A stretch of 64,000 nt of DNA from NCBI GenBank assembly GCA_965655095.1, contig OZ296648.1, forward strand, positions 190,216,001 to 190,280,000, given 5' to 3'. The translations under genes and the position numbers were made by a program. The stretch comes from Haplodiscus bocki. Lineage: Eukaryota. The notes below the pieces were generated by a model. That model saw nothing but the letters and a program-made list of their open reading frames with translations, searched no databases and was not told the DNA's origin. Positions within the stretch are counted from its first letter, which is position 1. The number at the start of each line of letters is the position of its first letter. Below, one piece after another: positions 184-36,640 of this stretch.

Positions 184-3100
184 AAGAATAAGAGTAAGAG
201 TAAGAATTTGTTTCTCTAATGGGGGGCAATTATAAAGTAACACAATTATAGACAACATTAAATATTCATACAACAAACAATACATGTAGATATACATTAT
301 AAATAGCACCATCCGAGGAGACCCTCCCAATTATGATGTTAAGACCCGAATACAGTAACAGCACAAGACAAGCAACTTCATTGAAAAAAGATTTTTGAAA
401 TTTGTTGTTTCATTATTACATGTTGCGTGTGTTTTAATGTTTTACGCTTGATTCTCATCGAAAAATGAACTGTACCCAAAGCTGTTTCCAAAAGGCACTT
501 GATAAGGTTTGCACCACTGTAACGCAGAGAATTATGACTGACAGAGCAGGATTCTTTTGGCAAAGAAAATAGGTTATGTTGAGCTCTTCTTGTTTGCATC
601 TCGGATAATTTGCGCTTTTATATCAAGTTGAGAAATTGAGTTGGTAGAACACCACAAACTGATTTTTAAAAAAAAGAGGCTCAAGGGTACAATAGTCATA
701 TACGTTTAATACATTTAATTCATCAAAAATTTCTACGGATGGGTATTAACCAGCCTGAAGTCAAATTTGTCTCAGTTGTTTTGTATTTTTAAATAGCTTT
801 TATCTGTTTTTTGAAGTGCAGCCTGTTTCAAGAGACCATATCCAATTATCAATTTATTTTAGTTACTATAAAACCGCAGAGGCACAGGCTTTTAAAGATA
901 GTTTCTTGATCCTGGCATTACTGAATATTGTTTTAATAGTTTTTTAAATACTTCAGCAATATGAAAACTAAATTTCATATGTTTATCGATTATATTGCCA
1001 AGATATTTTACACAATTAGTTTGCTTAATGACGGAATCTGACGAATGAATCACCTCTCCCTGATTTTTTGAGAAGTTTATGGCTTGAGTTTTATCGATGT
1101 TCAGAGCAAGTTTATAGACAGATAAACAATTCAGATTAATTTTAAGAAAAATTACAAAGCAAAAATTACTCATCCTGACTTTTGCGATAAATAAATCTCA
1201 TGTGGTCAGCAAAAAATTGAATCACGAATATCACAAGCACCTGGTAGATCACTGATGTATATTAAAAACAGTAGACGCCCAAGAATTGAGCCTTGCGGTA
1301 CTCCTTCCAGCAAGTACAAGAAATCCGAAAGTACATGATTTACCTGAACAAACTGACGTGGTTCTCTAAAATATGATTCAAACCACGTTAACGATTATCG
1401 GCTGACACCATATTTTTCCGGTTTAGCGAATAATTTTTCATGGTTGATGGAATCAAATGCTTTACGCAAACCAAGCAACATACATGTAAATGTATCAGCA
1501 CTCCTTTGCCTAATTTGTTCTGTAGTTTCAACAAGAGCGTCGAAAGTACTTCGTTTACAACGAAAACCAAACTGGTTCGAATAAGACACACTCTTCTTAA
1601 CGAAAAAAGAAAATAATCGTTCATACATGATTTTCTCGAACATTTGATTAATAGCTAGTAATATCGAAATGCATCTGTAGTTTTTGATAATCCTTATGTG
1701 ACTCAATTTCTGTAAAAGATATACTTTTGCTTCATTCAGACAATTCGGGGTTCAATCGCGTGACAATGGTAGATTTAGTGTTTCAATAAAAATGAAAAAA
1801 TCACCGGAAGTGAAGTTTTAAGCACTTCAGCTGAGGCACCATCATGTTCAACAGCTTTATTCTTTGTCAAATTACTTACCGTAATAGAAATCTGAGTTAT
1901 ATTGGTTGTGCAGGCAAACCTATTATCATCATTAGTATCATTATTTTTCATCCATTCTTTAGGTTCTTGTGTGGTTGGACATTCAACATTAGTTGCAAAA
2001 TTAACAATTTTTTTGTTGAGCCAACCCAAACTATAAGGAAAACTATAGGGGATTATATGGTATCTTTTTTGATCAAATGTATTCAGATTTGTTTTGACAG
2101 TTATTTCACCTGTCATTTCAATAAGTGGCTCAAAAAAATTTTCGGTTTATTCATTCAAAATGAAAAGACAGTTGAATATTGATAACATTCGGCTTATTTA
2201 ATAGTGACACTTGTCTTTTGGCTACTTTTCAGGAGTCTCAATTTAATCGAAGCCGTTTGTATATCTCTAAAGGGCTTCAATGCTTGTCTTTACTTATTGA
2301 TAGTTTTTTAAACTTCCTTTTCAAACCAAGGTGGTTTGATTTTTTTGTCTTTTTGCGGTGTTTTACAGAATTGCATAGTTCAATACTTTTTTGAATCAAT
2401 TCTAAAAAATGGTTGAATTTGCTCATCAGAGTCGTCAACAAGTTTGAGCACTTTCAGTTCATGAGAAAGTTATGCCAAAGAAATTTGTTTTGCATTTTCC
2501 CTATAATTAAATTGAAGAAATTTTAATGTAGTTCCAGTATCATCTTATTTCTTACAAGAGAATGGCAATTTCATGAAATTAGCACAGTGGCCAGTCAAAC
2601 CGGAATCAAGAATACCACAGTCAAGTTTTTCAAGGAATTGAATACGAATTATATGATCGATTAGAGATGCTGAATCTACGGTAATTCAGTCGTTGTTGCA
2701 GTCGTTAGTGATTGCGTCATTCCGTTATACTGCAATAAACTTGAAAAATCACCAGACAATATGTTTTGTTTCGGAAGATGAAAACTCAAATCGCCTAAAA
2801 TAAAAACTGGGGAGTCCACTGAATTAAAAATGTCATTTAGTGATAATCCAAACTCTCAATAGAGAATGTTTGAGGGGCGGAAAGCTGTACATGCAAACCA
2901 CAAAAAAAATTGGTTGTTCTTTTTGTTGCTTTAAATACTTTATGACATACGTTTGCTTTAGTGCATACGAACCCACATTTGATGGAATCGTGTACATAAA
3001 CCAGTACGCCGTCCTTTCTATTGAATGCAGGAGGAAATATCGGAGGCAAGTGTTTTTCCAAGTGCAACACTTGAAGCTCGGTTACAATTTGTATCCATGC

Positions 3101-4040
3101 TTCTCATAAACGAAAAGCAGAAGGGTTAATATTGCCAAAAGTTTCAAAAAAGATCTAAATTAACAAAATTTTTACTCAGTCAACAAAATTGACCTGTAAA
3201 ATCCATTTATTGCCCTTCCGACTGGTTTCAGTGTCTTTGATTAAATCTTTATCACTTTTAATTGTATATGTGGATGTGGTCGTTTCATTCGAAAAAGCCC
3301 TTGCCAAAAACGCACGTAGTCGCTCTGCAGAATCAACAATCTCTATGTCCCGTTTACGTAACGTAGATTTTTATAAAAGATTATATGCCCTTTAGCGTTG
3401 AACATTGTTAAAACTGCTTTTTCGTTAGAAATGTTAACATACTTTACGTCGGGCGCTGGCGAAGATTTCTTGCTAATTTTGCCCGCAGTAGTGTTTTATC
3501 GTCATCAATTGTTCTTTTTGGATGAGTTTTTTGAATTTTTTTTTGTATGTTAGAATGCGAATTGTAGTTTGACGTCAAACAAACTTTGCACTCAATGAGC
3601 GTGATCCTGGGTTTCTGGCGATGACACACACCGATATCTTGTTTGGATATAGTTACTCCGATATCGTTTGCCACCTCTACCTTACGCTGATCTACATCCT
3701 CATCATTAATCTCGGAAACAAAAATCCGTATGTTGTGACGTCGACCATACTGTTCATTTGAATCCGCACAAAACAAACTCGTAGTACCGGCGATATTTGA
3801 TGGTGGCGATGTTTTGCACTCTGCAAACCCCGAAGCAGCGCAAAATCCACATGAAAGGCGATCAATGAGGTTTCTGTGTAAACGTTTTTGCAACCATTTA
3901 GATATCTACGAAACACAATCTTTGCCGTCCGGTCCAGTCCCAGTGCATTGAATGAGATACATTGGCCAATATTTTTTGCTCTCTTTGTCTGTGACCGAAT
4001 TTCGCCGTGCTCTGATGGGCATACTTTATGAATCATATGA
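184..4040 (-). mobile_element. Degenerate CR1/L2-like non-LTR retrotransposon (ORF1 + APE + RT), fragmented by stops and frameshifts
   Basis: ORF1-type motif NEQYGRRHNIRIF (3444-3893). APE motifs DGVLVYVH and SASLIDHI (2650-3070). RT motifs YRCISILL, QFGFR, RKAFDSINH (1395-1706), GVPQGSILG (~1280-1305) and KYLGNIID (892-1173). A short AAGAGT-type repeat at 184-207 may be the tail. Boundaries approximate. Confidence 0.85.
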
Positions 4041-4340
4041 AACTATTTGATAAGTTTACGAAAACGAAATATGTTGTATAATCGACTTTATCATGAAGCG
4101 AACTCACAAAAATTCACTTGATTTACACATTGGATGGACTTGTAAACAGTTTTGTATTTGCTGATGACTTTGGGTGGACATGGCTTGTGAGATTTTTAAT
4201 TCGCTCGGATCCAAATTTTTGCTTTTCGGCAGCCTAGAACTTAGTGGCTAACAACAACTCAATCCAACGCCTAGTTTTACTTTTTTCTGCTATAAAATAC
4301 CCTTAAATCCCCCAAAACTCTCAACTTCAGAAAAAAACAT

Positions 4341-4400
4341 CTCAGATCGAAAACTTGACTGAAACGTTTTCAGTCTTATAGACCATCATCAGGATCTAAA
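4341..4400 (-). ncRNA. Candidate type I hammerhead ribozyme in the Penelope 3' region
   Basis: Minus strand reads tttagatc-CTGATGA-t-ggtc-tataa-gact-GAAA-acgtttcagtcaagtttTC-gatctgag. Core boxes are present, with stem II ggtc/gact and stem I tttagatc/gatctgag; stem III is weak. Hammerheads are an established feature of Penelope pLTRs. Confidence 0.6.
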
Positions 4401-4535
4401 AATATACAAATTGAAAAAGTTGTAGAAACTTTATATAAAAAGCACCATTAAGTGGAAAAAAAAGTTGAAACTGATAAGATATATAGACCGAGGAAAGTTT
4501 TATCAAGCCAAAGAATATTTTGGAACAATGATAAA

Positions 4536-6083
4536 TCACACTCTCAGTGTGAGCTCGCGCGTCCTGTACTCCTCCTTCTGGTTGATGGACGGCGCTCTCC
4601 TACAGATGTGAAGGGCTTCCAGAGTGAGCAGCTTGATATTGCTATTGGTCCTGTCGATGACGTTAATTTCGGCATCTTGCATCGTTTGGGAGCAGTTGCT
4701 CAGGTGACTTCCCACATGGCTGGCTGGTCTGGCGTGTTCCTGAGTTCTCGTCGTCAAGTGGCGGGTTGTTTGCCCAACGTAGCTGGATTGGCACCCAGGA
4801 CATGTAATTTGGTAGACGACATTACTCAGAAACGTCTTGGGGACTGGCGACTGCAGAGATGGAAGAGCGGTTTTGAGCTTTCGGGTTGTGAAAATAGTTG
4901 AGACTTCCACGGTTCTTCTCAACTTTTTTGCGAACTGATCGCTTTTATCGCCGCGGTATTGAAGAATAAGAGGCATGTTTTTTCCTCTTTCACAGGTTGA
5001 TCTTTCTGAATGGCTGATTGTTTTTTCAATGAGTATCTTATCTAATGTCTGACGGAGAATGGGTTTGTAGAATTGAGGTGGGTACTGATTCTCTTCCCAA
5101 GTCTCGGCTGCTCTTTTCATGCCTTCGGTGAAGTTTTCCCAGCTCGAGGTGGCATCGAAAATTCTATAGATTGTGCCCTCACTGATGTTCTTCTTGTACT
5201 TGACAGGCGCCAGTGCCCCGAGTTGGAGGATTAAACCTGTGTCAGTGGGTTTTTGGTACCACGAGGTGTCTATTTTCTCATTCAATAAGCGCACTTCCAT
5301 GTCCAGAAAAGGCATTGCGTTGTCTTTGAGGGTCTCAATGGTGAATTCCAAGTTTGGGTGCAGGTTGTTGCTGACCTCAAGAATGCGTTCAATGTTGGAT
5401 ACTTTGCCACTCCTCAGTATGTCGTCCACGTATCGTCCAAAGACTTTCGCATCAGGGGTCTCAATGGGGGTCGAGTCTTTCAACTGACACCCACATAGCC
5501 AATTCGTCTGCGATGGCAAGCTTTTTATCTCTGCTAATGTCAAACCTGCGCACTTTCTGTGGAACCAAGATCTACAAGTTGAGCATTGGATAGCATAACT
5601 GTTCTTGCTTACCATCTTTTCACACCCTCCACACCGATATCCCAAATTTTTCTGACGTGGCAGGCTGGGTGGTTGAGGTGCAGGATTTTCCACAGCAGTT
5701 TGGGCCTCATAATTTTTCAGCCAAACATTTGCGAGTATGACAGCAAGGGAAGCGCCCATAGCGACACCGTCTTTCTGGATGTACCAGTCTGACCCACTCA
5801 TGAACCACACATTGGTCACCGCAAATTCCATGAGCTTCTTGAAGGTGGGCTGTTGCAGTTCAGGGGGATTACTTGATGTGTAGAGTGCTTCGCAGGCCAA
5901 CTCGATTGCCTCGTGGACTGGCACACTCATGTAGAGGCTTTTTGCGTCCGTAGAGAAGATGGTTTTGTCCGACTCTAGTGCTAATTGTTCGAGTCTTTGC
6001 CTCATACCTTCAGTCGATGCCTCAATGTTGGTGGCCGGGACCTTATCAAAAAAACTTTGTGAGCCATTTATTGAGCCTGTCAT
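4536..6083 (-). CDS. Penelope RT/GIY-YIG polyprotein fragment containing an in-frame PHD-type zinc finger
   Basis: 515-aa open frame. The first ~10 aa are off-frame, and the true N-terminus lies upstream of a frameshift. YVDD is at 5421-5432 and the PHD-like block at 5487-5633. Confidence 0.88.
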   Translation of the reverse strand: MTGSINGSQSFFDKVPATNIEASTEGMRQRLEQLALESDKTIFSTDAKSLYMSVPVHEAIELACEALYTSSNPPELQQPTFKKLMEFAVTNVWFMSGSDWYIQKDGVAMGASLAVILANVWLKNYEAQTAVENPAPQPPSLPRQKNLGYRCGGCEKMVSKNSYAIQCSTCRSWFHRKCAGLTLAEIKSLPSQTNWLCGCQLKDSTPIETPDAKVFGRYVDDILRSGKVSNIERILEVSNNLHPNLEFTIETLKDNAMPFLDMEVRLLNEKIDTSWYQKPTDTGLILQLGALAPVKYKKNISEGTIYRIFDATSSWENFTEGMKRAAETWEENQYPPQFYKPILRQTLDKILIEKTISHSERSTCERGKNMPLILQYRGDKSDQFAKKLRRTVEVSTIFTTRKLKTALPSLQSPVPKTFLSNVVYQITCPGCQSSYVGQTTRHLTTRTQEHARPASHVGSHLSNCSQTMQDAEINVIDRTNSNIKLLTLEALHICRRAPSINQKEEYRTRELTLRV

Positions 6084-6322
6084 AGGCGCTTCCAGGCAAC
6101 GACAGAATAGGTCTCAGTGGGGTGTTAACTTTGTGTACTTTGGCTAATCCATAAAATCGGGCAGGTTGCGAATCATTACACTTTAATTTTTTGAAGAGGT
6201 CGTCATCTATTCCGCCATTTTTCAGCAGACTTCTCAGACTTTCATTCATATTATCCTATATTTCCAGTATGTTGTTCTTCTTGCTGGTTTTAGTCACTTT
6301 CTCAAATTGGTCACCGTTCAAA

Positions 6323-9085
6323 ATGTATGTATGTACGTATGTATGTATGTATGTAAGACTTTATTACTTTTCATAATGACTAAAAATTAAACAATATGGC
6401 AAACTAAAAATTATAAAACATATTCATCTAATGCAAATAAGCGTTTGAACAACTGTTTCACTCGAGGTTTGAAGATATTAGGCCCATCGAAAGAGTTGAG
6501 ATTGTGCTCCTTCATCAACCAGTTTGACAGGGGAACAATTCGCTGGAAAAAGTGATTGTCGGCCTGCTTTGTACGAGTTGAATTAACCTTGAGAACGGGC
6601 TTCAGGGTAGATCTGGTGTTGTAGTAAAAATTGTCACAGGGGTATGTGATCGATAAAAAGTTGTGAAAATCAAAATCGTACATGCCATTTAGGATTCGGT
6701 TGAGAAAAAGCAGATCATTTATTTTCAGGAGAAGATTTATAGGAAGTAAACCAGACGCGATTAATATAGTCTTGTATGTGGCACCCTTGCATGTCCACTT
6801 TGAGACGTTTTTCTGGAACTGTTCTAATTTAGATAGGTCTTTCTGGTTCGGGGACCAAACTTGTGACCCGTAAAATAATTTTGGCAAAATATAGGTCATA
6901 TACAATTTGATCTTGATTTGGCTATGTAAATGTGGCGGTAGACATCTTCTTAAGGATATAATTCTAATGTAACATGCTTTTGGACGATCAGATATGTGTT
7001 TTGGCCCAGCTAAGTTGCTTGAAAAAGATAGACCGAGACCAACCACGCTTTTTTGAAGAAAATTCTCATGGTCATCCAAGATAAGAATTGGAATATCTGA
7101 AATGTAATTTTGAGACCGAAAATCGAATGAAATGAGCTGTGTCTTTTTGGCATTGAATGATAATTTGTTTACCTGAGACCACTAAGAAAGTGCTAGTATA
7201 TCATTTTGCATTTCTAGAGGGTTGTTATGAATAAGTTTAAGATCATCGGCATTCAGGAAAGTTTTTGAGTGCGATACTTGGGTTGGCAGGTCATTGAAAA
7301 AAACCAAGAATAAGAGTAGACCCAGAATTGATCCCTGAGGCACACCACTGGTGACTGGTAATGACGCTGATATAATATTGTTGAGTTTAACACATTTAAC
7401 GCGATTTGTTAGGAAGCTCCATAGCAAACTTAGCAAAGATCCTCCAATACCAAAAAGGCGTAATTTTGCGAGAAGCGTCGCGTGAGATACGCTATCAAAT
7501 GCTTTTGAGAAATCAAGATAAAGTGCATTACAATCTGTATTTGTGTCAACGTTATTGTAGATAGCCTGCAAATAAATTATTAGTTGTAGCACCGTGGATT
7601 TGCGTCTCATAAAACCAAATTGGGAGCCGGATAGCTGGGCGGAGAAGAAATCATAAAACTTTTTGAACAGTAAGCGCTCAAATACTAAAGATAATTTTGA
7701 TAAACAAGAAATTGGTCTCTAAATACATATCGATTCGATATTACCAGATTTATGAAGGGGTGTTATTATAGCTTGCTTCCATTCGTTTGGCCAATATGAG
7801 TGAATTAACAAGTTCTTTATTAAATTATGGTAACGGATTCCCAGTGCATTAGAAGTCTATAAAATGAAATCACCACTATTAGCATATGTACTAGAACCAC
7901 GTTTTGTTTGTCGTAAGCCCTTTTCGACGTCTTGAATTGTGAATTCGATATTGTTTAAGGTATTTTCAGAGAAATCAGAAAATGGTAGACTATCTTTCTT
8001 GAAAACACTGCAAAAATATTTGTTGAAACCATTTGCTTTCTTAAGATCATCAACTAGGATTTCGTCGTTTAGAGTCATACAAGCTGGTAATGTATTGCTA
8101 CGTTGGAAAGAATTAATCAGTTTATAGCAGTCATTAACGTTCAGATTTGCGTCTACAATATTTTCAATGAATATATGGGTATCAAGAGCAACAGATTCTT
8201 GTACATTGGTGGTTAATATCTGAACTGATGGTCTGGGAATATACGTTGGTTGTCAATTGTTTCTTCTTTGTGTAGTATGGAGCTTGTTGAGCATATGAAT
8301 AGTGTGCGAACTGTAAAAGCTAGGAAATTGGGTTCTTCTTTGCCGCTTACGTTTGAAGAAGGGTTGAATAATGGAGGTTAATTCTCCAATCCAGTGGGAA
8401 TAATAAGCAGTCGTGTCACGTATAAAAAAAAGAAAATAAATTAGATCCGATACACTGATTTATTTTCGGGTAATCTGGTTTAAGGGATAGCATAGGCTGA
8501 GATGTAGATTCGCATGAAGAGTGTGTTCTTGGAATGTCGAACTCAACAAAATAGTGATCAGAAAATGAATTTTCATCTATAGTAAAGTGCGTTGACCCAT
8601 AATTTATAAGCACACAGTCGAAAATTTTTCGAGATTGATGGGTGGGTGAAGGAATAATTTGTTCATACCCGTTTTTAGTTAACATTTCGAGGAATAAGGG
8701 ATACTCTGAAGTAGTGCTTTCAGTCATGCTGTTCCAATCGATTTTTGACATGTTTAAATCACCACAAATAATAATGTTGTCACATTTGGCTTTGGAAGTA
8801 GTTTTATCGATATTATCTGTCAGAATAATATCTTTGATGCGAAAATCACTGGTAAATGGTGGATTGTATATGGTAATAATAAGTACATTGTTATAGATGA
8901 CTGAGCACATAAAATCGGCATTTAGAGATACTTTGCGCACTTCTAAACATTTTCTTGACAGAATTAATACACCGCCGTGTGAACCAGTATTTCTTTCCGA
9001 ACGATTTATAATTGAATAATTGTCGTCAGGAAAAAGGAAAAATTTTGTGTAAAATTTTCATCCAGCCAAGTTTCGGTGAACAAAC
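6323..9085 (-). mobile_element. CR1/L2-like LINE ORF2 (APE + RT), degenerate, with (ACAT)n tail
   Basis: TETWLDE (~9060-9080); IYNPP, IICGDLN and SDHY (8416-8940); LDFSKAFDSVSH, SGVPQGSILG and ADDLK (7182-7610); C-terminal region 6411-7079; (ATGT)n microsatellite at 6323-6354. Confidence 0.88.
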
Positions 9086-31677: not shown

Positions 31678-32675
31678 AATAATATAGTAAACTCCGGCTT
31701 TGCCACTAACTTCGCTTCGCTCGCCTGGTAGCAAATCCGTAGTTTACCCGTTCCCTTCGCTTCGCTCCGGTCACTTATATTATTGTTCGACCCTACGGGT
31801 CTCATCTTTACTCGCTCCGCTCGTGGGATGCTCGACTAACGTCTCGCATAGTAAATAATATCTACGTATAACTTACCTTTGTTTAGTGATGTATACATAA
31901 CCATGCTCGTATTCGGTAAAATGTTTTTTTCTCATATATAACATATATTTCCACCTTTATGTGAACATATAATTAACAGAAAATTTTACACGTACACATT
32001 TACATTACAAGCGAGACTGCACTACCAGTTATGTCGACATAATACACGAGATTAAAAATACCACTACCAATTATCTCGACATAACGCATACACGAGATTG
32101 AAAGTTCACTACTACCAATTATGTCGACATAACGCATACACGAGACTGAAAAGTTCACCATTATCATCTATGTCGACATAACAGAATATGTGTATTTGTT
32201 TTTGTCTCTTTCTATTCTGTCTCCTATAGCAGATTGGCACTGTAGAAGGACATCGACAAAAGTGCAGGCTTGGCGGAGTGTTTGGGGGTTCACTCCTTGA
32301 TACGTATCCCCAGTCTTTGTCGTACAATCGCTATGATGCTATAGGAGGAACTTTCCATGTCTTGATGCTTGAAAAAGTTGACTAGATCGAGGGGAACTCT
32401 GCCAGGAATGCTCACTCGGATTTGCTAGAAATAGTAGATTACAGAGTTGGCCAGTGGAGTTTTTGCAAAACTTTTTCTCCAAGGAATACTTTCATGCGAA
32501 ATATTGTGAATTGTTTTCCGATATCCATTTACGACATGCAAAATGGAAATGATTGTTTAACTCATTACAATGAGTTTTTACATATTCTGGATTTTGAGAT
32601 AGTATTATAAAAAATTGTATTTGCATTATTGGTATAGGAAATTTTCAAAAGTAAGTTCTATTTATATTTGACAGA
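31678..32675 (+). repeat. Polinton left terminal inverted repeat
   Basis: Ungapped reverse complement of ~45026-46023; 31806-32441 is identical to 45260-45895. Confidence 0.97.
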
Positions 32676-32830
32676 TTACTATAAATTTTTTATTGTTAGT
32701 TTATGTGTAAAACCATTTTCTCGTATGTAATAAATAACATGTTGTTTCATTTTTTTATCGATAACAGTTTTATTTTTTATTATATAAAACTGTAAAGACA
32801 ATGAATGATAATTCAAATTTAATCTTCAAA

Positions 32831-33280
32831 CTAAATCACAATAGGTTTGACTATCCCGTTTTTCATTACTTTTCTATTAATACTTTTAATACATTTTATA
32901 ATATGTCGAGGAGCATTCTTATAATAAGATAAAGGTGCAGAATTCGTTAACGACAAATAAAATTCTTCATAGTTGTTATCAATATTTGGTAAATGGATAG
33001 GTTCTTCTATCACATGTTCAGGACTTTTTGTAGGTATAGTTCCATTTTCATATATCTCATTTCCATTCTCGATCCACACATGTAAGCAATAATATTTATT
33101 ATTTCTTATTGAAAAGTTTTTAATGATTTTAGACTCTGGAACATATTGATTGAATAAGTAATTTCCCAAAACACAAACACCACTAATGTTATTTTTCTGA
33201 AATTCTTTCATAAAGATTTCTATTAAATCTTCTAATATGTTTTTAAATATTACAATATTTTTACAATAAAAAAATGACAT
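32831..33280 (-). CDS. Polinton accessory ORF, possible transglutaminase-like (Cys-His) protein
   Basis: Uninterrupted 149-aa frame with GVCVLGN ... LHVWIE ... IYE.GT. Confidence 0.45.
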   Translation of the reverse strand: MSFFYCKNIVIFKNILEDLIEIFMKEFQKNNISGVCVLGNYLFNQYVPESKIIKNFSIRNNKYYCLHVWIENGNEIYENGTIPTKSPEHVIEEPIHLPNIDNNYEEFYLSLTNSAPLSYYKNAPRHIIKCIKSINRKVMKNGIVKPIVI

Positions 33281-33359
33281 ATTAATTTTTGTAACAATTT
33301 CACAAATACATTATTGATTACAGACTCTTGAATCATTTTCATTATAGTTGTCATATAAC

Positions 33360-36300
33360 ATGAATTATAATAAGGAAGCATATAACCAAATTCGTTTGGA
33401 GCTTCTCTTTTCAATAGATTTAAGTTAGCTTCGAATTCTTTATTTTCGTTAATTTGATTATTAAATTTATTACACCTTCTTTTTTCCTTACATTCATTAC
33501 AAAATCTCATTTTCGTACGTATAATTATTCCGCTATTAGGCGATTTTTTCCAGCTTTTAGGCAAGAAAGCAGATTTTTTTAGCTTCTATCATTTTAAGAT
33601 ATTGAGAACGATCCAATAATCGTTTACTATCATTGAATCCTTTGAAGGTTTTATGATCTTGTACAATACCAGATTTATCTATAGTTAAACAGTACTTTAT
33701 TTTTGGTGCTAGAAATAAACCATAAAATATTCCGCCTGTTTTATAATCATTTTTGCCTTGACATATCTCTTCTCCAACTAGTTTAGCTTTATCCAACACA
33801 TCCCAATATACTTTTCAATTTATAGTGAATCGGTATCTGAATAATATCTTTTATTTTTGTAGAATCCATCTTTTTCTCTGATAAATTTATTCATAATTCT
33901 TTTACTATTGCTTAAGATAAAAGCTCCGAGATGTGCAGGCAGATTGTTTTTAATGTCACAATCGTCATCTAATCTCTCATCTTTTCCCTTTTTCACAATA
34001 TAATTTTCATTAGGCAATTTCCAATAATGCAAAATATTTTCGTCAAATTCTGTTTTCATCCAAGTTTCTGACTTACAATAATATTATTCATTAATATCTT
34101 TTCGTATTTGAACTCCTTATAAACTGTTCAATAATAATTTAACTAACCCTTGCATTAAATCGTTTTTTTTTCGTCTTATATTTTTGTCTTTTCTATAACT
34201 TTTCTCAAAGGTGATATCTTTAAGTTTTCTCGATAAATAACACCTCCGTAAATTCGCATTACATTCCCACCTATTTTAACAATTTCTTGAATATCAACAC
34301 TAGTTAAAGAATCTATAATATTATCATTTCGCATTCTATTAACTTCTATGATTTTATTTTTTTCTTTGATCGGTAATTCTTGAACTATAAGATTTGGTGG
34401 ATTGTAATTTTTCATTTTTAAAATTGCGCTATCATTGCAATCTTGATTAAAAGATTGATCATTGAAATCGTTAACCAACACCTCGTTCATATAAGGTTTA
34501 AATGTATAACCAGTTCCTTTTTTTTAGGATAAACACTATCATTATCCCACATTGCAGAAGGATATAAACTAGTAGCGTCAAAATCCATTGGAGTTTTTCA
34601 AATCTAATTTTAACAACTCCTTATGAAATGGTAACATGTTAAGTTTTTTGTTAATATAATCAGTTTTTTTCCTTTCGGTTAATTTTTCTATAATCCTCAT
34701 ATTTTGAATCCAATTCTTTTGCATATAGTTTTTCATATTTGTTTAAAAATTCAAAATACCTCTTAGTAGATCACATATGTTACCGTTAACGTTTAATTTT
34801 TTTGAAATAATAATAAAAACCTCGTCGCTAGTTTTAGATTTATAATGTTCAATCAAAGAATTACATCTACCGCCCTTAATCGGATTACGTACAAAATTTC
34901 TCATAAAGGATCGGCGTATATAAAATTTGGTTGGTCGTTTTCATCTCTTAAATTATTGAAATATTTTTTTGCTGAAGAGGGTAATGTTAACGAGTTTTTC
35001 ATACTCAATTCTGTCAAATCTTCCATACCCATTGTATATCTAGCATAACAAAAAGCTGTTGATAATACGTCATTTTTAACATAAGGTAACCATTTGTTTT
35101 TCGTAGCTTCCCAAGTATCCTCATAATTTTTATCATGTTCCATTTCTTGTTTTAATAATGAAGGTTGTAATTCATAACTGATGCCTATTTTTTTCAAAAT
35201 TCTCTTATTATGAACTCTTTCACATCTAAAATGAACATATTGAAGTTTTTTTTTATTTTCATCTACATATCCATTAATTATTTGAAGTGAAATAATACCA
35301 GCTCCGTTTTTAATTAATTTAACAACGCTTCGCCATTGAGGTAGATTGTTTAATACTACATAACTATTAAAACCAGATCCATTATGCGCTATCATATATA
35401 GATTATATTCAAATATCTTATTTTTTACTTTTTAGCTTCTCCCTTTAATGATGAAACTTGATCTAACATATCATTAATACAACCACTTGGTTTAAAAACA
35501 AAACAATCATTTAAACCTTTTGATATTTTTTTTCTGATATACCTCGATTGTATTTACCTGATGTTTTACTTAGTTTATATATACAATTACAATACGGAAC
35601 AGCTCTATCTTTCTTATCAGTCTCTAAATCAAACACAATATTATTGCTTAATGGAGATTGAACTTCTTCAGGTTTGTATTCATGTTTAAAAAAACTTTTA
35701 ACGTGTTTGTCAGATATAACATTATCAATAACTTTAAAGTTTAATTTCAACTTCACTTCTATTGCTTGATTAAAACAAATACGATTTGATTTCCAAATTA
35801 AACAGAATTGATTATTATGTATGAACGATGATTTATTTCTTTGAGTTGTATTTCGCGATTTTATTCTCGTTCCAGCAAAACAACCAATGTTGATATTATA
35901 TTTTTTACAAAATGGTTGAATTCTAGCAGAGGTCATTACTCCTGATCGATATTTTTCATTTCTAATGAAATCCTTCTGTAAAATCTTTATTAGTGAAATA
36001 GTTGATACATTTTATAAAACCGAACACAGAAGTTGGTATATAACAGTTTTGTCCACGATATTCGAGAATCTCTTTCATGTAATTAGCACCTTAGCATAAG
36101 CACTTAGTTTAACAACTTTGAATTGGGGTGTGTTTAATTTGTAAACATAACAGTAAAAGTAACATTTTCGCTATCATAATCAATATCTATTGCATTTATA
36201 TAACTTTCAAAATCATCCATATTTCTAAATCTGATTTGTTTTTCGTTCAACGGGTCCTATAACCATCAATCCATTTAACTCAAACTTACACGTGTAATCT

Positions 36301-36590
36301 ATTAATTTTTCATTTTTAATTTCATGTGATTTTAAACCATTTACATATATTTTATTGCTTGTTGCTAATTCAAAAAATCTACCTGAATCAATGTCTTGTT
36401 CTATCATTTTTTCTCTTTTTTGCTTTCTTTCTTTTTGTTTTTTTAAATTAATTTCGTTTTGTTTTCTAATCAAAGCTCTTTTTTTATTTACTTCATATTG
36501 CTTTTTCTTTTGTAATTTTGTTTTTTGTGATTGATGATTGTCTCTATATCGTTTCACAGCTAATCGAGTTTTGTTCATTACACTGTTCAT
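33360..36590 (-). pseudogene. Protein-primed family B DNA polymerase (pPolB), disrupted
   Basis: Exo I VFDLET, Exo II AHNGSGFN, Exo III YVKND. Motif A DFDATSLYPSAM (~34550-34588), motif B KLLLNSL*G (~34115-34140), motif C YSDTDS (~33826-33843), then FLAPKIKYC. The N-terminal limit is uncertain. Confidence 0.93.
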
Positions 36591-36640
36591 TTATAAAAAT
36601 AAATTTTTTGAAAAATAGCTTTTCAATAAAAACGTAATAA

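What the first reader, a model, noticed from the sequence alone, without database searches (positions are those of the whole stretch)
5448..5696. PHD-type zinc finger inserted in frame inside the reverse transcriptase palm of a Penelope element
Seen: between RT motif GVAMGASL..ILAN and the catalytic RYVDD (normally a short stretch) there are ~80 extra residues, CGGC-x12-CSTC-x4-H-x2-C-x16-WLCGC. They are flanked by Pro-rich linkers (ENPAPQPPSLP, STPIETP) and have no stop or frameshift. Known: C4HC3 PHD fingers read histone H3 tails and occur in CR1/L2 ORF1 proteins. I do not know of one embedded within a PLE RT core. Inference: a domain captured into a surface loop that could tether the RT-endonuclease to specific chromatin, i.e. 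a candidate chromatin-targeted Penelope lineage. The last pair is CxC rather than CxxC.
Basis: partly seen in the sequence, partly recalled or inferred. Interest (0 to 1): 0.85.

Follow-up and report, generated by a model that had tools for sequence, protein, structure and literature searches.

The report
PHD finger inside a Penelope RT
A dead copy of a Penelope-type jumping gene carries a real, Pygopus-like PHD zinc finger spliced into the middle of its reverse transcriptase, and this odd layout is conserved under selection across a whole deep lineage of such elements in marine invertebrates, probably as a chromatin-docking module.

Summary
On the minus strand, 4329-6326 is a 5'-truncated, frame-broken copy of a Penelope/Poseidon-type retrotransposon (RT plus C-terminal GIY-YIG endonuclease). 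Its RT carries 81 extra residues between motif B and the catalytic RYVDD.

The core of the insert (5487-5633) is a PHD finger. It passes Pfam's PHD threshold, and its predicted fold is closest to the Pygopus PHD.

The insert is not private to this copy:
- Every close homolog that covers the site has it, down to about 40% identity, including intact 849-859 aa ORFs in multi-copy families.
- More than 75 more distant relatives have a fixed 33-35 residue loop there, with at most one Cys.
- On a tree built without the insert, PHD+ elements fall on one side of a single well-supported branch.
- The PHD core evolves as slowly as the enzyme domains (dN/dS 0.05), while its linkers evolve faster (0.21).
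- Contigs from independent sequencing runs bridge both junctions.

Chromatin reading is plausible but untested. The histone-pocket Trp and Val are invariant, whereas the Pygopus Asp is a Lys here.

There is a precedent: PHD insertions in Chlamys PLEs of green algae, at other positions. I file this as a new variant of a known kind. First-stage notes of this scan flagged the same feature at seven other places in this genome.

The parts
4329..6326 (-). 5'-truncated copy of a PHD-bearing Penelope/Poseidon-type element (about 2.0 kb, including about 205 nt of 3' UTR)
   Evidence: 95% nucleotide identity to L001:5291-7290 over 2003 nt, with the similarity ending at these coordinates. A 750-aa relative, P0338, shows that about 180 N-terminal residues are missing here.
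6046..6249 (-). Upstream ORF piece with RT motifs 1-2 (ARFYGLAKVHK...PLRPILSLPGS), in a different frame from the main ORF
   Evidence: It aligns to P0338 columns 181-247.
6046..6083 (-). Zone of the frame break between the two ORF pieces
   Evidence: The two frames overlap here. Contigs of runs X1, X2 and X6 differ from the window by a one-base indel at 6048.
4536..6083 (-). Main ORF (515 aa): RT motifs A-E, the PHD insert, the thumb/HTH region and the C-terminal GIY-YIG endonuclease
   Evidence: AF2 model with mean pLDDT 78. The whole model matches G2L4 RT, TERT and group II intron RT.
5919..5957 (-). RT motif A (FSTDAKSLYMSVP), catalytic Asp present
5727..5777 (-). RT motif B (QKDGVAMGASLAVILAN)
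   Evidence: Predicted helix 112-123 with pLDDT 84-87.
5634..5726 (-). End of the motif B helix (about 10 residues), then the N-terminal Pro-rich linker of the insert
   Evidence: pLDDT is below 50 at residues 139-147. The linker columns are poorly conserved and vary in length. Linker dN/dS is 0.21, against 0.05 for the core.
5487..5633 (-). PHD finger core (residues 151-199; C4HC3 with a CGC last pair)
   Evidence: Pfam PF00628. All eight Zn-ligand positions plus V, W and W are conserved in 15 lineages (seven ligands invariant, the last Cys at 90%). The Pygopus PHD is the best solved relative, at E 3e-12 and rmsd 1.2-1.6 A.
5436..5486 (-). C-terminal linker of the insert (QLKDSTPIETPDAKVFG)
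   Evidence: pLDDT is below 50 at residues 200-207..
5421..5435 (-). RT motif C (RYVDD), catalytic aspartates intact
   Evidence: R, Y and the second D are invariant and the first D is nearly invariant (at least 90%) across 25 sequences. Predicted beta-hairpin 215-227 with pLDDT 88-92.
4734..4820 (-). GIY-YIG core with the CCHH motif (VVYQITCPGCQSSYVGQTTRHLTTRTQEH)
   Evidence: Pfam GIY-YIG scores 17.8 bits, below the 22.6 cut-off. Homologs carry precomputed PF01541 hits. Y424, C428, C431, Y435, G437, R446, E449 and H460 are invariant.

Best explanation
Shown: the window holds a dead (5'-truncated, frame-broken) copy of a Penelope/Poseidon-type retrotransposon. It belongs to a deep lineage in which a Pygopus-like PHD zinc finger of about 50 residues, on two flexible linkers, is built into the loop between the RT motif B helix and the motif C catalytic hairpin.

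On the sampled tree the insert needs only one change, most simply a single gain. It has been kept through long diversification. It occurs in intact full-length ORFs of multi-copy families. Its core is under purifying selection as strong as that on the RT and endonuclease, so active elements need it and it does not harm polymerase function.

Inferred: the B-C turn lies on the outer underside of the palm, so the finger hangs outside the nucleic-acid cleft. There it most likely acts as a histone H3 tail reader, sensitive to the K4 methylation state. It would dock the RT-endonuclease RNP on nucleosomes of a particular chromatin state during target-primed reverse transcription, biasing where new copies land.

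The window's own copy cannot do this any more.
For: The PHD is real:
- Pfam PF00628 scores above threshold.
- In a profile search of PDB sequences the best hits are Pygopus PHDs at E 3e-12; the next families are around 1e-7.
- The AF2 model of the PHD alone (core pLDDT 87-92) superposes on Pygo PHDs at rmsd 1.2-1.6 A over 52-53 residues with 34-40% identity, followed by the H3K4me readers BPTF, TAF3, AL1/3, MLL1 and EBS.

It is lineage-wide:
- The insert is present in every one of the 26 best hits that covers the site, and in P0064, P0069 and P0115. The B-to-C spacing there is 95-118 residues with 7-10 Cys.
- More than 75 further homologs have 33-35 residues and at most one Cys.
- On a tree built without the insert columns, 13 PHD+ rows form one side of a branch with SH-aLRT 98, requiring one change.
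- Intact ORFs exist: P0014 has 859 aa in a cluster of 242 members, and the P0011 cluster holds four members of 849 aa.

It is under selection:
- All eight Zn-ligand positions plus V28, W43 and W65 are conserved (seven ligands invariant, the last Cys at 90%) although the inserts are only 19-35% identical.
- Between P0002 and P0003, dN/dS is 0.05 for the PHD core, 0.21 for the linkers, 0.03 for the RT and 0.09 for the thumb plus EN.
- In deeper pairs the PHD dN (0.22-0.29) is about that of the RT (0.19-0.23), while the linker dN is 0.9-1.2.

The palm is intact:
- pLDDT is 84-92 on both sides of the insert, 74-82 for the PHD and below 50 for the linkers.
- In P0014 the Pfam RVT_1 match stops at profile position 145 of 205, just before the PHD.

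It is not an artefact:
- Contigs of four runs from three studies bridge both junctions, and none skips the insert.

Reader hypothesis:
- In human Pygo1 the K4me2 pocket is formed by W366, Y341, D352, V350 and A356. The W366E mutation abolishes binding and V350E cuts it to below 3% (PMC2726290).
- The window PHD aligns W, Y, V and A to these residues, and W and V are invariant in the clade.
Against: - No binding, expression or insertion-site data exist for this lineage.
- The Pygo D352 lip residue is a Lys in the window copy and Arg in its nearest relatives.
- The Tyr wall is kept in only 4 of 15 lineages (a Phe in a fifth). Others have an aromatic residue at a different loop position, so the ligand preference, or even histone binding, may differ or be absent.
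- The tree sample was drawn by similarity to the query and is unrooted. 'Single gain' relies on all other RTs lacking an insert at this site.
- No RNA run holds the stretch.
Confidence: 0.55

Rival explanations
1. The finger is functional and selected, but it is not a histone-mark reader. It would bind a host protein (as the rear face of the Pygo PHD binds BCL9), the element's own RNA or RNP, or DNA. In that role it would help RNP assembly, nuclear import or strand handling rather than choose chromatin.
For: - Purifying selection shows only that the fold matters, not what it binds.
- The Pygo D352 equivalent is Lys or Arg in the window's sub-clade, and the Tyr wall is not conserved clade-wide.
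- This PHD type is a common accessory of unrelated mobile elements: it occurs in APE-type LINEs, Helitron-like proteins and multi-PHD proteins. None of these has a tested ligand.
Against: - The two residues most critical for H3K4me binding in Pygo (the Trp divider and the Val base) are invariant in all 15 lineages.
- All the best structural matches are H3K4me readers.
Confidence: 0.3
2. The insert is a selectively neutral passenger that happens to be tolerated in a surface loop.
For: - The linkers are variable in length and sequence.
- The window copy and its close paralog show dN/dS of 0.5-0.8.
Against: - The 0.5-0.8 ratio is the same across RT and EN, so it reflects decay of dead copies.
- Between lineages the PHD core has dN/dS 0.05, and all eight ligand positions are conserved (seven invariant, the last Cys at 90%) at 19-35% identity.
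- No PHD-less member lies inside the clade.
Confidence: 0.03
3. The insert is an assembly chimera or a copy-specific capture, present only at this locus.
For: None found.
Against: - Homologs from at least five other assemblies carry the insert at the same site.
- Contigs from runs of three studies bridge both junctions, with no joints.
- There are 23 members in the 90%-identity cluster.
Confidence: 0.01

Closest known systems
Chlamys Penelope-like elements of Chlamydomonas with PHD finger insertions (Craig, Yushenova, Rodriguez and Arkhipova 2021, PMC8557442)
   Same: A PLE whose single ORF has a PHD finger inserted in frame inside a catalytic domain. The authors propose it as a chromatin-related accessory domain.
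   Different: Chlamys elements have an N-terminal endonuclease and a CxC linker, and they live in green algae. Their PHD sits between RT2a and RT3(A), or inside the EN. They were reported as five families in one genus. Here the element is a canonical C-terminal-EN animal PLE, the finger sits between motifs B and C, and it marks a deep multi-family clade.
Canonical Penelope/Poseidon PLEs (RT plus C-terminal GIY-YIG with CCHH)
   Same: RT motifs, DKG motif in full-length relatives, GIY-YIG with CCHH, no extra Zn-finger linker, 5' truncation, and head-to-head and partial-tandem arrangements.
   Different: Canonical elements have a fixed 33-35 residue B-C connection with at most one cysteine. No hammerhead ribozyme was detected here.
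Pygopus PHD finger (PDB 2vpe, 2vpg, 3zpv, 4up0)
   Same: Best sequence and fold match. The YxCGxC start is identical, as are the spacing to the Val and Ala pocket-base residues and the WFHRxC motif with the Trp pocket divider.
   Different: The last ligand pair is CGC rather than CxxC in the window's sub-clade. The Asp lip (D352) is replaced by Lys or Arg. There is no evidence of a BCL9-like partner. The finger is embedded in an enzyme rather than lying at the C-terminus of a cofactor.
PHD fingers in CR1-like LINE ORF1 proteins (Kapitonov and Jurka 2003) and chromodomains of chromovirus integrases
   Same: A chromatin-reader-type domain carried by a retroelement, presumed (PHD) or shown (chromodomain) to link integration to chromatin.
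   Different: Those domains are terminal or sit in a separate ORF. Here the domain interrupts the polymerase core itself.

Membership tests
Penelope-like element, canonical C-terminal EN+ (Penelope/Poseidon type) | RT with motifs A, B and C (catalytic D, then the AMG...LAN helix, then YVDD) | tested here: met
   The fold matches TERT, G2L4 and group II intron RTs. RVT_1 is detected in the relative P0014.
Penelope-like element, canonical C-terminal EN+ (Penelope/Poseidon type) | C-terminal GIY-YIG endonuclease containing the CCHH motif | tested here: met
   The motif VVYQITCPGC..YVGQT..RxxEH...H is invariant across 25 sequences. Pfam GIY-YIG reaches only 17.8 bits, below the 22.6 cut-off. Homologs carry precomputed PF01541 hits.
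Penelope-like element, canonical C-terminal EN+ (Penelope/Poseidon type) | No CX2-5CxxC linker finger upstream of GIY-YIG (this separates the type from Neptune, Nematis and Hydra, by the criteria in PMC8557442) | tested here: met
   There is no Cys pair in the 60 residues before GIY-YIG in any PHD+ sequence. No reference-based phylogeny was possible.
Penelope-like element, canonical C-terminal EN+ (Penelope/Poseidon type) | N-terminal domain with the DKG motif | tested here: met
   AVPFDKG is present in P0338 (same family) and in P0014, P0011 and P0016. It is missing from the window copy because of the 5' truncation.
Penelope-like element, canonical C-terminal EN+ (Penelope/Poseidon type) | 5'-truncated copies, pseudo-LTR partial tandems and inverted adjacent copies | tested here: met
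   The window copy is truncated. L004 holds a head-to-head pair, a 113-nt direct repeat at the ORF start and end, and 273-nt flanking inverted repeats that are 97% complementary.
Penelope-like element, canonical C-terminal EN+ (Penelope/Poseidon type) | Hammerhead ribozyme in the pLTR | tested here: not met
   No Rfam hammerhead hit at gathering score or at E up to 1, in the window or in L001 and L003-L006. Flanks may be incomplete, and the feature is typical rather than obligatory.
PHD finger (PF00628, C4HC3) | Cys4-His-Cys3 ligand pattern with canonical spacing and the W-x-H and W-x-C aromatics | tested here: met
   The last pair is CGC in the window's sub-clade, CxxC in P0012, P0014, P0016 and P0020, and CxxH in P0011.
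PHD finger (PF00628, C4HC3) | Score above Pfam's gathering threshold | tested here: met
   25.0 bits in the whole ORF and 33.3 bits for the insert alone, against a cut-off of 24. The PF00628 and PF27108 (PHD_Pygo) hits on homologs are precomputed.
PHD finger (PF00628, C4HC3) | PHD fold | tested here: met
   The predicted model matches Pygo PHD crystal structures at rmsd 1.2-1.6 A over 52-53 residues with probability 1.00. This rests on a prediction only.
PHD finger (PF00628, C4HC3) | Binds two zinc ions | not testable with these tools
   Needs metal analysis of the recombinant domain.
H3K4me-reading PHD (Pygopus-like pocket) | Trp pocket divider (Pygo1 W366) and Val/Ala pocket base (V350, A356) | tested here: met
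   W and V are invariant in 15 lineages. W, V and A align to the Pygo residues in the window copy. The roles of these residues are taken from PMC2726290.
H3K4me-reading PHD (Pygopus-like pocket) | Tyr wall (Y341) and Asp lip (D352) | tested here: inconclusive
   The Tyr is present in the window, P0002, P0003 and P0019 (a Phe in P0010) but not clade-wide. The Asp is replaced by Lys or Arg, except in P0019. Other lineages have Y, F or W at the lip position.
H3K4me-reading PHD (Pygopus-like pocket) | Binds an H3 tail peptide in a methylation-dependent way | not testable with these tools
   Needs a peptide array, ITC or NMR.
Chlamys PLEs with PHD insertion | N-terminal GIY-YIG with a CxC linker; PHD between RT2a and RT3(A) or within the EN | tested here: not met
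   Here the EN is C-terminal and the PHD lies between motifs B and C. The Chlamys features are taken from PMC8557442.

The most novel reading that the evidence does not exclude
A whole clade of animal Penelope-like retrotransposons uses a histone-tail reader built into the polymerase palm to choose the chromatin state where target-primed reverse transcription starts. This would be the first chromatin-guided PLE lineage in animals. It would also be a natural demonstration that the RT B-C loop accepts a folded targeting domain without loss of activity.
Probability: 0.3. Interest if true: 0.72.

Novelty: new variant of a known kind. Interest (0 to 1): 0.55.

Why it matters
PLEs are the least understood class of eukaryotic retrotransposons, and little is known about how they select targets.

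A conserved reader-type domain inside the RT of a deep animal lineage gives a concrete, testable handle on chromatin-directed integration. One host, the acoel Symsagittifera roscoffensis, has a chromosome-scale reference.

The finding also identifies the motif B to motif C turn as a site where evolution has inserted a folded domain of about 50 residues, on flexible linkers, into a working reverse transcriptase. That is of practical interest for engineering RT fusions.

The concept is not new for PLEs, because of the Chlamys precedent. This limits the surprise.

Tried and rejected
- **Hammerhead ribozymes.** Rfam scans of the window and five related loci, at gathering score and at E up to 1, found none.
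- **Origin of the finger.** A profile search of 1.84 billion representatives gave 10,374 hits. The top ones are multi-PHD proteins, APE-type LINEs, a Helitron-like protein, an ORC3-domain protein and a TAF3-like protein (Bromo_TP domain plus PHDs). Only about 3 of the best 149 examined are in PLE context. The PHD type is therefore not PLE-specific, and the donor cannot be named. A tree of 50-residue fingers was judged too weak to try.
- **Host range.** ESM Atlas feature and shape searches returned only PHD-less PLE clusters from arthropods, nematodes and molluscs. A region-restricted word search found only 12 proteins, none with names. The only named hosts are two Symsagittifera roscoffensis proteins.
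- **dN/dS in deep pairs.** dS is saturated in these pairs, so only P0002 against P0003 gave a usable ratio.
- **Window copy against its closest paralog.** All regions give dN/dS of 0.5-0.8, as expected for dead copies, so this pair says nothing about selection.
- **Expression.** No RNA run holds the stretch.
- **Geometry of the finger relative to the active site.** Model coordinates are not exposed to scripts.
- **Rejected alternative domain calls.** C1, RING and Prok-RING all score below their thresholds and below PHD.
Full report
**1. What is in the sequence**

On the minus strand, an ORF of 515 aa (4536-6083) encodes, in order:
- RT motif A (FSTDAKSLY, 5919-5957);
- motif B (QKDGVAMGASLAVILAN, 5727-5777);
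- a 97-residue stretch;
- motif C (RYVDD, 5421-5435);
- the thumb/HTH region;
- a GIY-YIG endonuclease core with the CCHH motif (4734-4820).

The stretch between motifs B and C contains CGGC-x12-CSTC-x4-H-x2-C-x16-WLCGC at 5487-5633.

An upstream piece with RT motifs 1-2 (6046-6249) lies in another frame, so the frame is broken between 6046 and 6083.

Comparison with a 95%-identical copy (L001) puts the element at 4329-6326. A 750-aa ORF of the same family (P0338) shows that about 180 N-terminal residues are missing. The window copy is therefore a dead, 5'-truncated insertion, as is usual for Penelope-like elements (PLEs). Its PHD ligands are all still in place.

A decayed APE-plus-RT LINE lies 85 nt upstream.

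**2. Is the insert a PHD finger?**

- Pfam's PHD model scores 25.0 bits in the whole ORF and 33.3 bits (E 4.9e-8) on the insert alone; the cut-off is 24. C1, RING and other treble-clef models stay below their cut-offs.
- A PHD-shaped regex finds no other site in six frames of the window.
- A profile of 15 inserts finds Pygopus PHD fingers as the best solved relatives (E 3e-12), well ahead of other PHDs (about 1e-7).
- The precomputed Pfam hits on homologs include PF27108, whose name is PHD_Pygo.
- The AF2 model of the insert alone (core pLDDT 87-92) superposes on Pygo PHD crystal structures at rmsd 1.2-1.6 A over 52-53 residues with 34-40% identity. The next matches are the H3K4me readers BPTF, TAF3, ALFIN-like, MLL1 PHD3 and EBS.

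**3. Is it private to this copy or an artefact?**

No.

A word-seeded HMMER search returned 281 homologs. Each of the best 26 that covers the site has the insert, as do P0064, P0069 and P0115. In these the spacing from motif B to motif C is 95-118 residues with 7-10 cysteines. More than 75 further homologs have a fixed 33-35 residues and at most one cysteine.

PHD+ proteins go down to about 40% identity with the window ORF. They include intact full-length ORFs in multi-copy clusters:
- P0014 has 859 aa and 242 cluster members.
- The P0011 cluster has four members of exactly 849 aa.
- P0012 has 220 members and P0016 has 104.

Contigs of four public runs from three studies, two of them labelled coral or coral-reef metagenomes, bridge both junctions of the insert. 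None skips it. The same contigs differ from the window by a one-base indel at 6048, which coincides with the frame break.

First-stage notes of this scan flagged the same feature at seven other places in this genome. I did not check those copies.

**4. Evolution**

I built a tree of 88 sequences from which the insert columns were removed. All 13 PHD+ rows fall on one side of a branch (SH-aLRT 98), so one change of state suffices. Path lengths inside the PHD+ side (1.0-1.5 changes per site) are as deep as those among the PHD- elements.

The tree is unrooted, and the sample was drawn by similarity to the query. That the change was a gain rests on the absence of such an insert in other PLEs and RTs. 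This is general knowledge, plus the 33-35 residue loop seen.

Within the inserts, identity to the window is only 19-35%. Even so, the following are conserved:
- invariant: C21, C24, C37, C40, H45, C48 and C67;
- 90% conserved: C69;
- invariant: V28, W43 and W65.

Selection between P0002 and P0003:

| Region | dN/dS |
|---|---|
| PHD core (dN 0.054, dS 1.0) | 0.05 |
| Linkers | 0.21 |
| RT | 0.03 |
| Thumb plus EN | 0.09 |

In deeper pairs dS is saturated. There the PHD dN (0.22-0.29) matches the RT (0.19-0.23), while the linker dN is 0.9-1.2.

The window copy against P0001 gives 0.5-0.8 in every region, as expected for decaying dead copies.

The P0012, P0014, P0016 and P0020 sub-clade has the canonical CxxC, and P0011 has CxxH.

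**5. Does the palm survive?**

In the AF2 model of the whole ORF (mean pLDDT 78) the confidence pattern is as follows:
- The motif B helix (112-123) and the motif C hairpin (215-227) are confident, at pLDDT 84-92.
- The finger (148-199) has pLDDT 74-82.
- The two linkers (139-147 and 200-207) fall below 50.

This is the picture of an independent module on flexible tethers.

The whole model still matches G2L4 RT, telomerase RT and group II intron RT. In P0014 the Pfam RVT_1 match ends at profile position 145 of 205, immediately before the PHD.

I could not measure where the finger sits relative to the cleft, because coordinates are not exposed. From the general architecture of right-hand polymerases, the turn from the B helix to the C strand is on the outer underside of the palm. 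This is an inference.

**6. Most likely mechanism**

Fiedler et al. 2008 (PMC2726290) show that the K4me2 pocket of human Pygo1 has W366, Y341 and D352 as walls and V350 and A356 as base. W366E abolishes H3K4me binding, and V350E or A356E reduces it to below 3%.

The phmmer alignment of the window PHD to Pygo2 puts Y, V, A and W of the window on these positions, with identical spacing:
- window: YRCGGCEKMVSKNSYAIQC...SWFHRKC
- Pygo2: YPCGACRSEVNDDQDAILC...KWFHREC

W and V are invariant clade-wide. The Asp lip is a Lys here (Arg in P0002, P0003 and P0009, Asp in P0019). In the CxxC sub-clade and in P0007 and P0011 that position is Tyr, Phe or Trp. In P0014 it aligns with a Tyr of MLL1 PHD3; from memory, that Tyr is a cage residue in MLL1.

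So a methyl-lysine pocket is plausible in most lineages, but its preference cannot be read from sequence.

I therefore commit, at moderate confidence, to this model: the finger is an H3-tail reader that docks the RT-EN RNP on nucleosomes and biases integration.

The main rival is a non-histone adaptor role. Neutral-passenger and artefact readings are contradicted by the data.

**7. Comparison with what is known**

By the criteria summarised in Craig et al. 2021, the element has:
- a C-terminal GIY-YIG with CCHH;
- no CX2-5CxxC linker finger;
- a DKG motif in full-length relatives.

This is the Penelope/Poseidon architecture. I could not place it on a reference phylogeny.

Structural habits fit PLEs. 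They include 5' truncation, and in L004 a head-to-head pair of elements, a 113-nt direct repeat at the ORF start and end, and 97%-complementary outer inverted repeats. No hammerhead ribozyme was found.

Full-text searches found a single report of PHD fingers in PLEs. Five Chlamys families in Chlamydomonas carry the finger between RT2a and RT3(A), or inside the EN. I found no description of an animal C-terminal-EN PLE with a PHD, or of any insert between motifs B and C. Repbase and Dfam could not be consulted.

The PHD type itself is shared with many other mobile-element proteins (APE-type LINEs, Helitron-like proteins) and with host proteins (a TAF3-like protein). Its donor is therefore unresolved.

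**8. Hosts**

The 90%-identity clusters of P0012 and P0019 each contain an NCBI protein of the acoel Symsagittifera roscoffensis, annotated as uncharacterized.

The window's own stretch is held by runs of a coded 'organism A' and, in part, by coral and coral-reef metagenomes.

The large ESM Atlas PLE clusters from arthropods, nematodes and molluscs do not carry PHD. The PHD+ clade thus looks like a minority lineage of marine invertebrates.

**9. Verdict**

The novelty is real but incremental: a new insertion site, a new PLE clade and deep conservation, against the published Chlamys precedent. I rate it a new variant of a known kind, with interest 0.55.

Noticed in passing
window 6411-8940 (-): A decayed LINE lies 85 nt upstream of the PLE copy's truncated 5' end. 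It has an APE endonuclease (Exo_endo_phos_2, E 6e-12) and an RT (RVT_1, E 2.5e-14), split into several ORFs. Its 3' part (6356-6500) has k-mer depths of 18,000-54,000 in runs X1 and X2, so it is an extremely abundant repeat in that organism.
   Followed up: partly
window 4329-4366 (-): Contigs of runs X1, X2 and X6 diverge from the window at about 4360-4366, whereas the window and L001 copies stay similar down to 4329. This extra 34-37 nt at the 3' end resembles the 30-40 bp 'tail' described for PLE insertions in PMC8557442.
   Followed up: no
L004:427-6296: An intact 859-aa PHD+ PLE (3001-5580, +) sits head to head with a 729-aa ORF of a different PHD+ family (747-2936, -), which is 69% identical in the finger. 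The unit is bounded by 273-nt inverted repeats that are 97% complementary. A 113-nt direct repeat lies at the ORF start and end.
   Followed up: partly
P0338 (same family as the window copy): The longest ORF of the window's own family (750 aa) has two damaged finger positions: Cys to Tyr in HRKY, and Trp to Cys before CGC. Together with about 5% divergence between copies, this suggests the family is no longer active in this genome.
   Followed up: no
P0121-P0269 (representative search): Many short proteins carry two to six tandem fingers of this same PHD subtype. The subtype also occurs at the N-terminus of APE-type LINE proteins and in a Helitron-like (DUF6570) protein. This points to a pool of TE-associated, Pygo-like PHD fingers in invertebrate genomes.
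   Followed up: partly
window 31678-46023: Other first-stage notes place a Polinton/adintovirus-like element in this window. I did not examine it.
   Followed up: no
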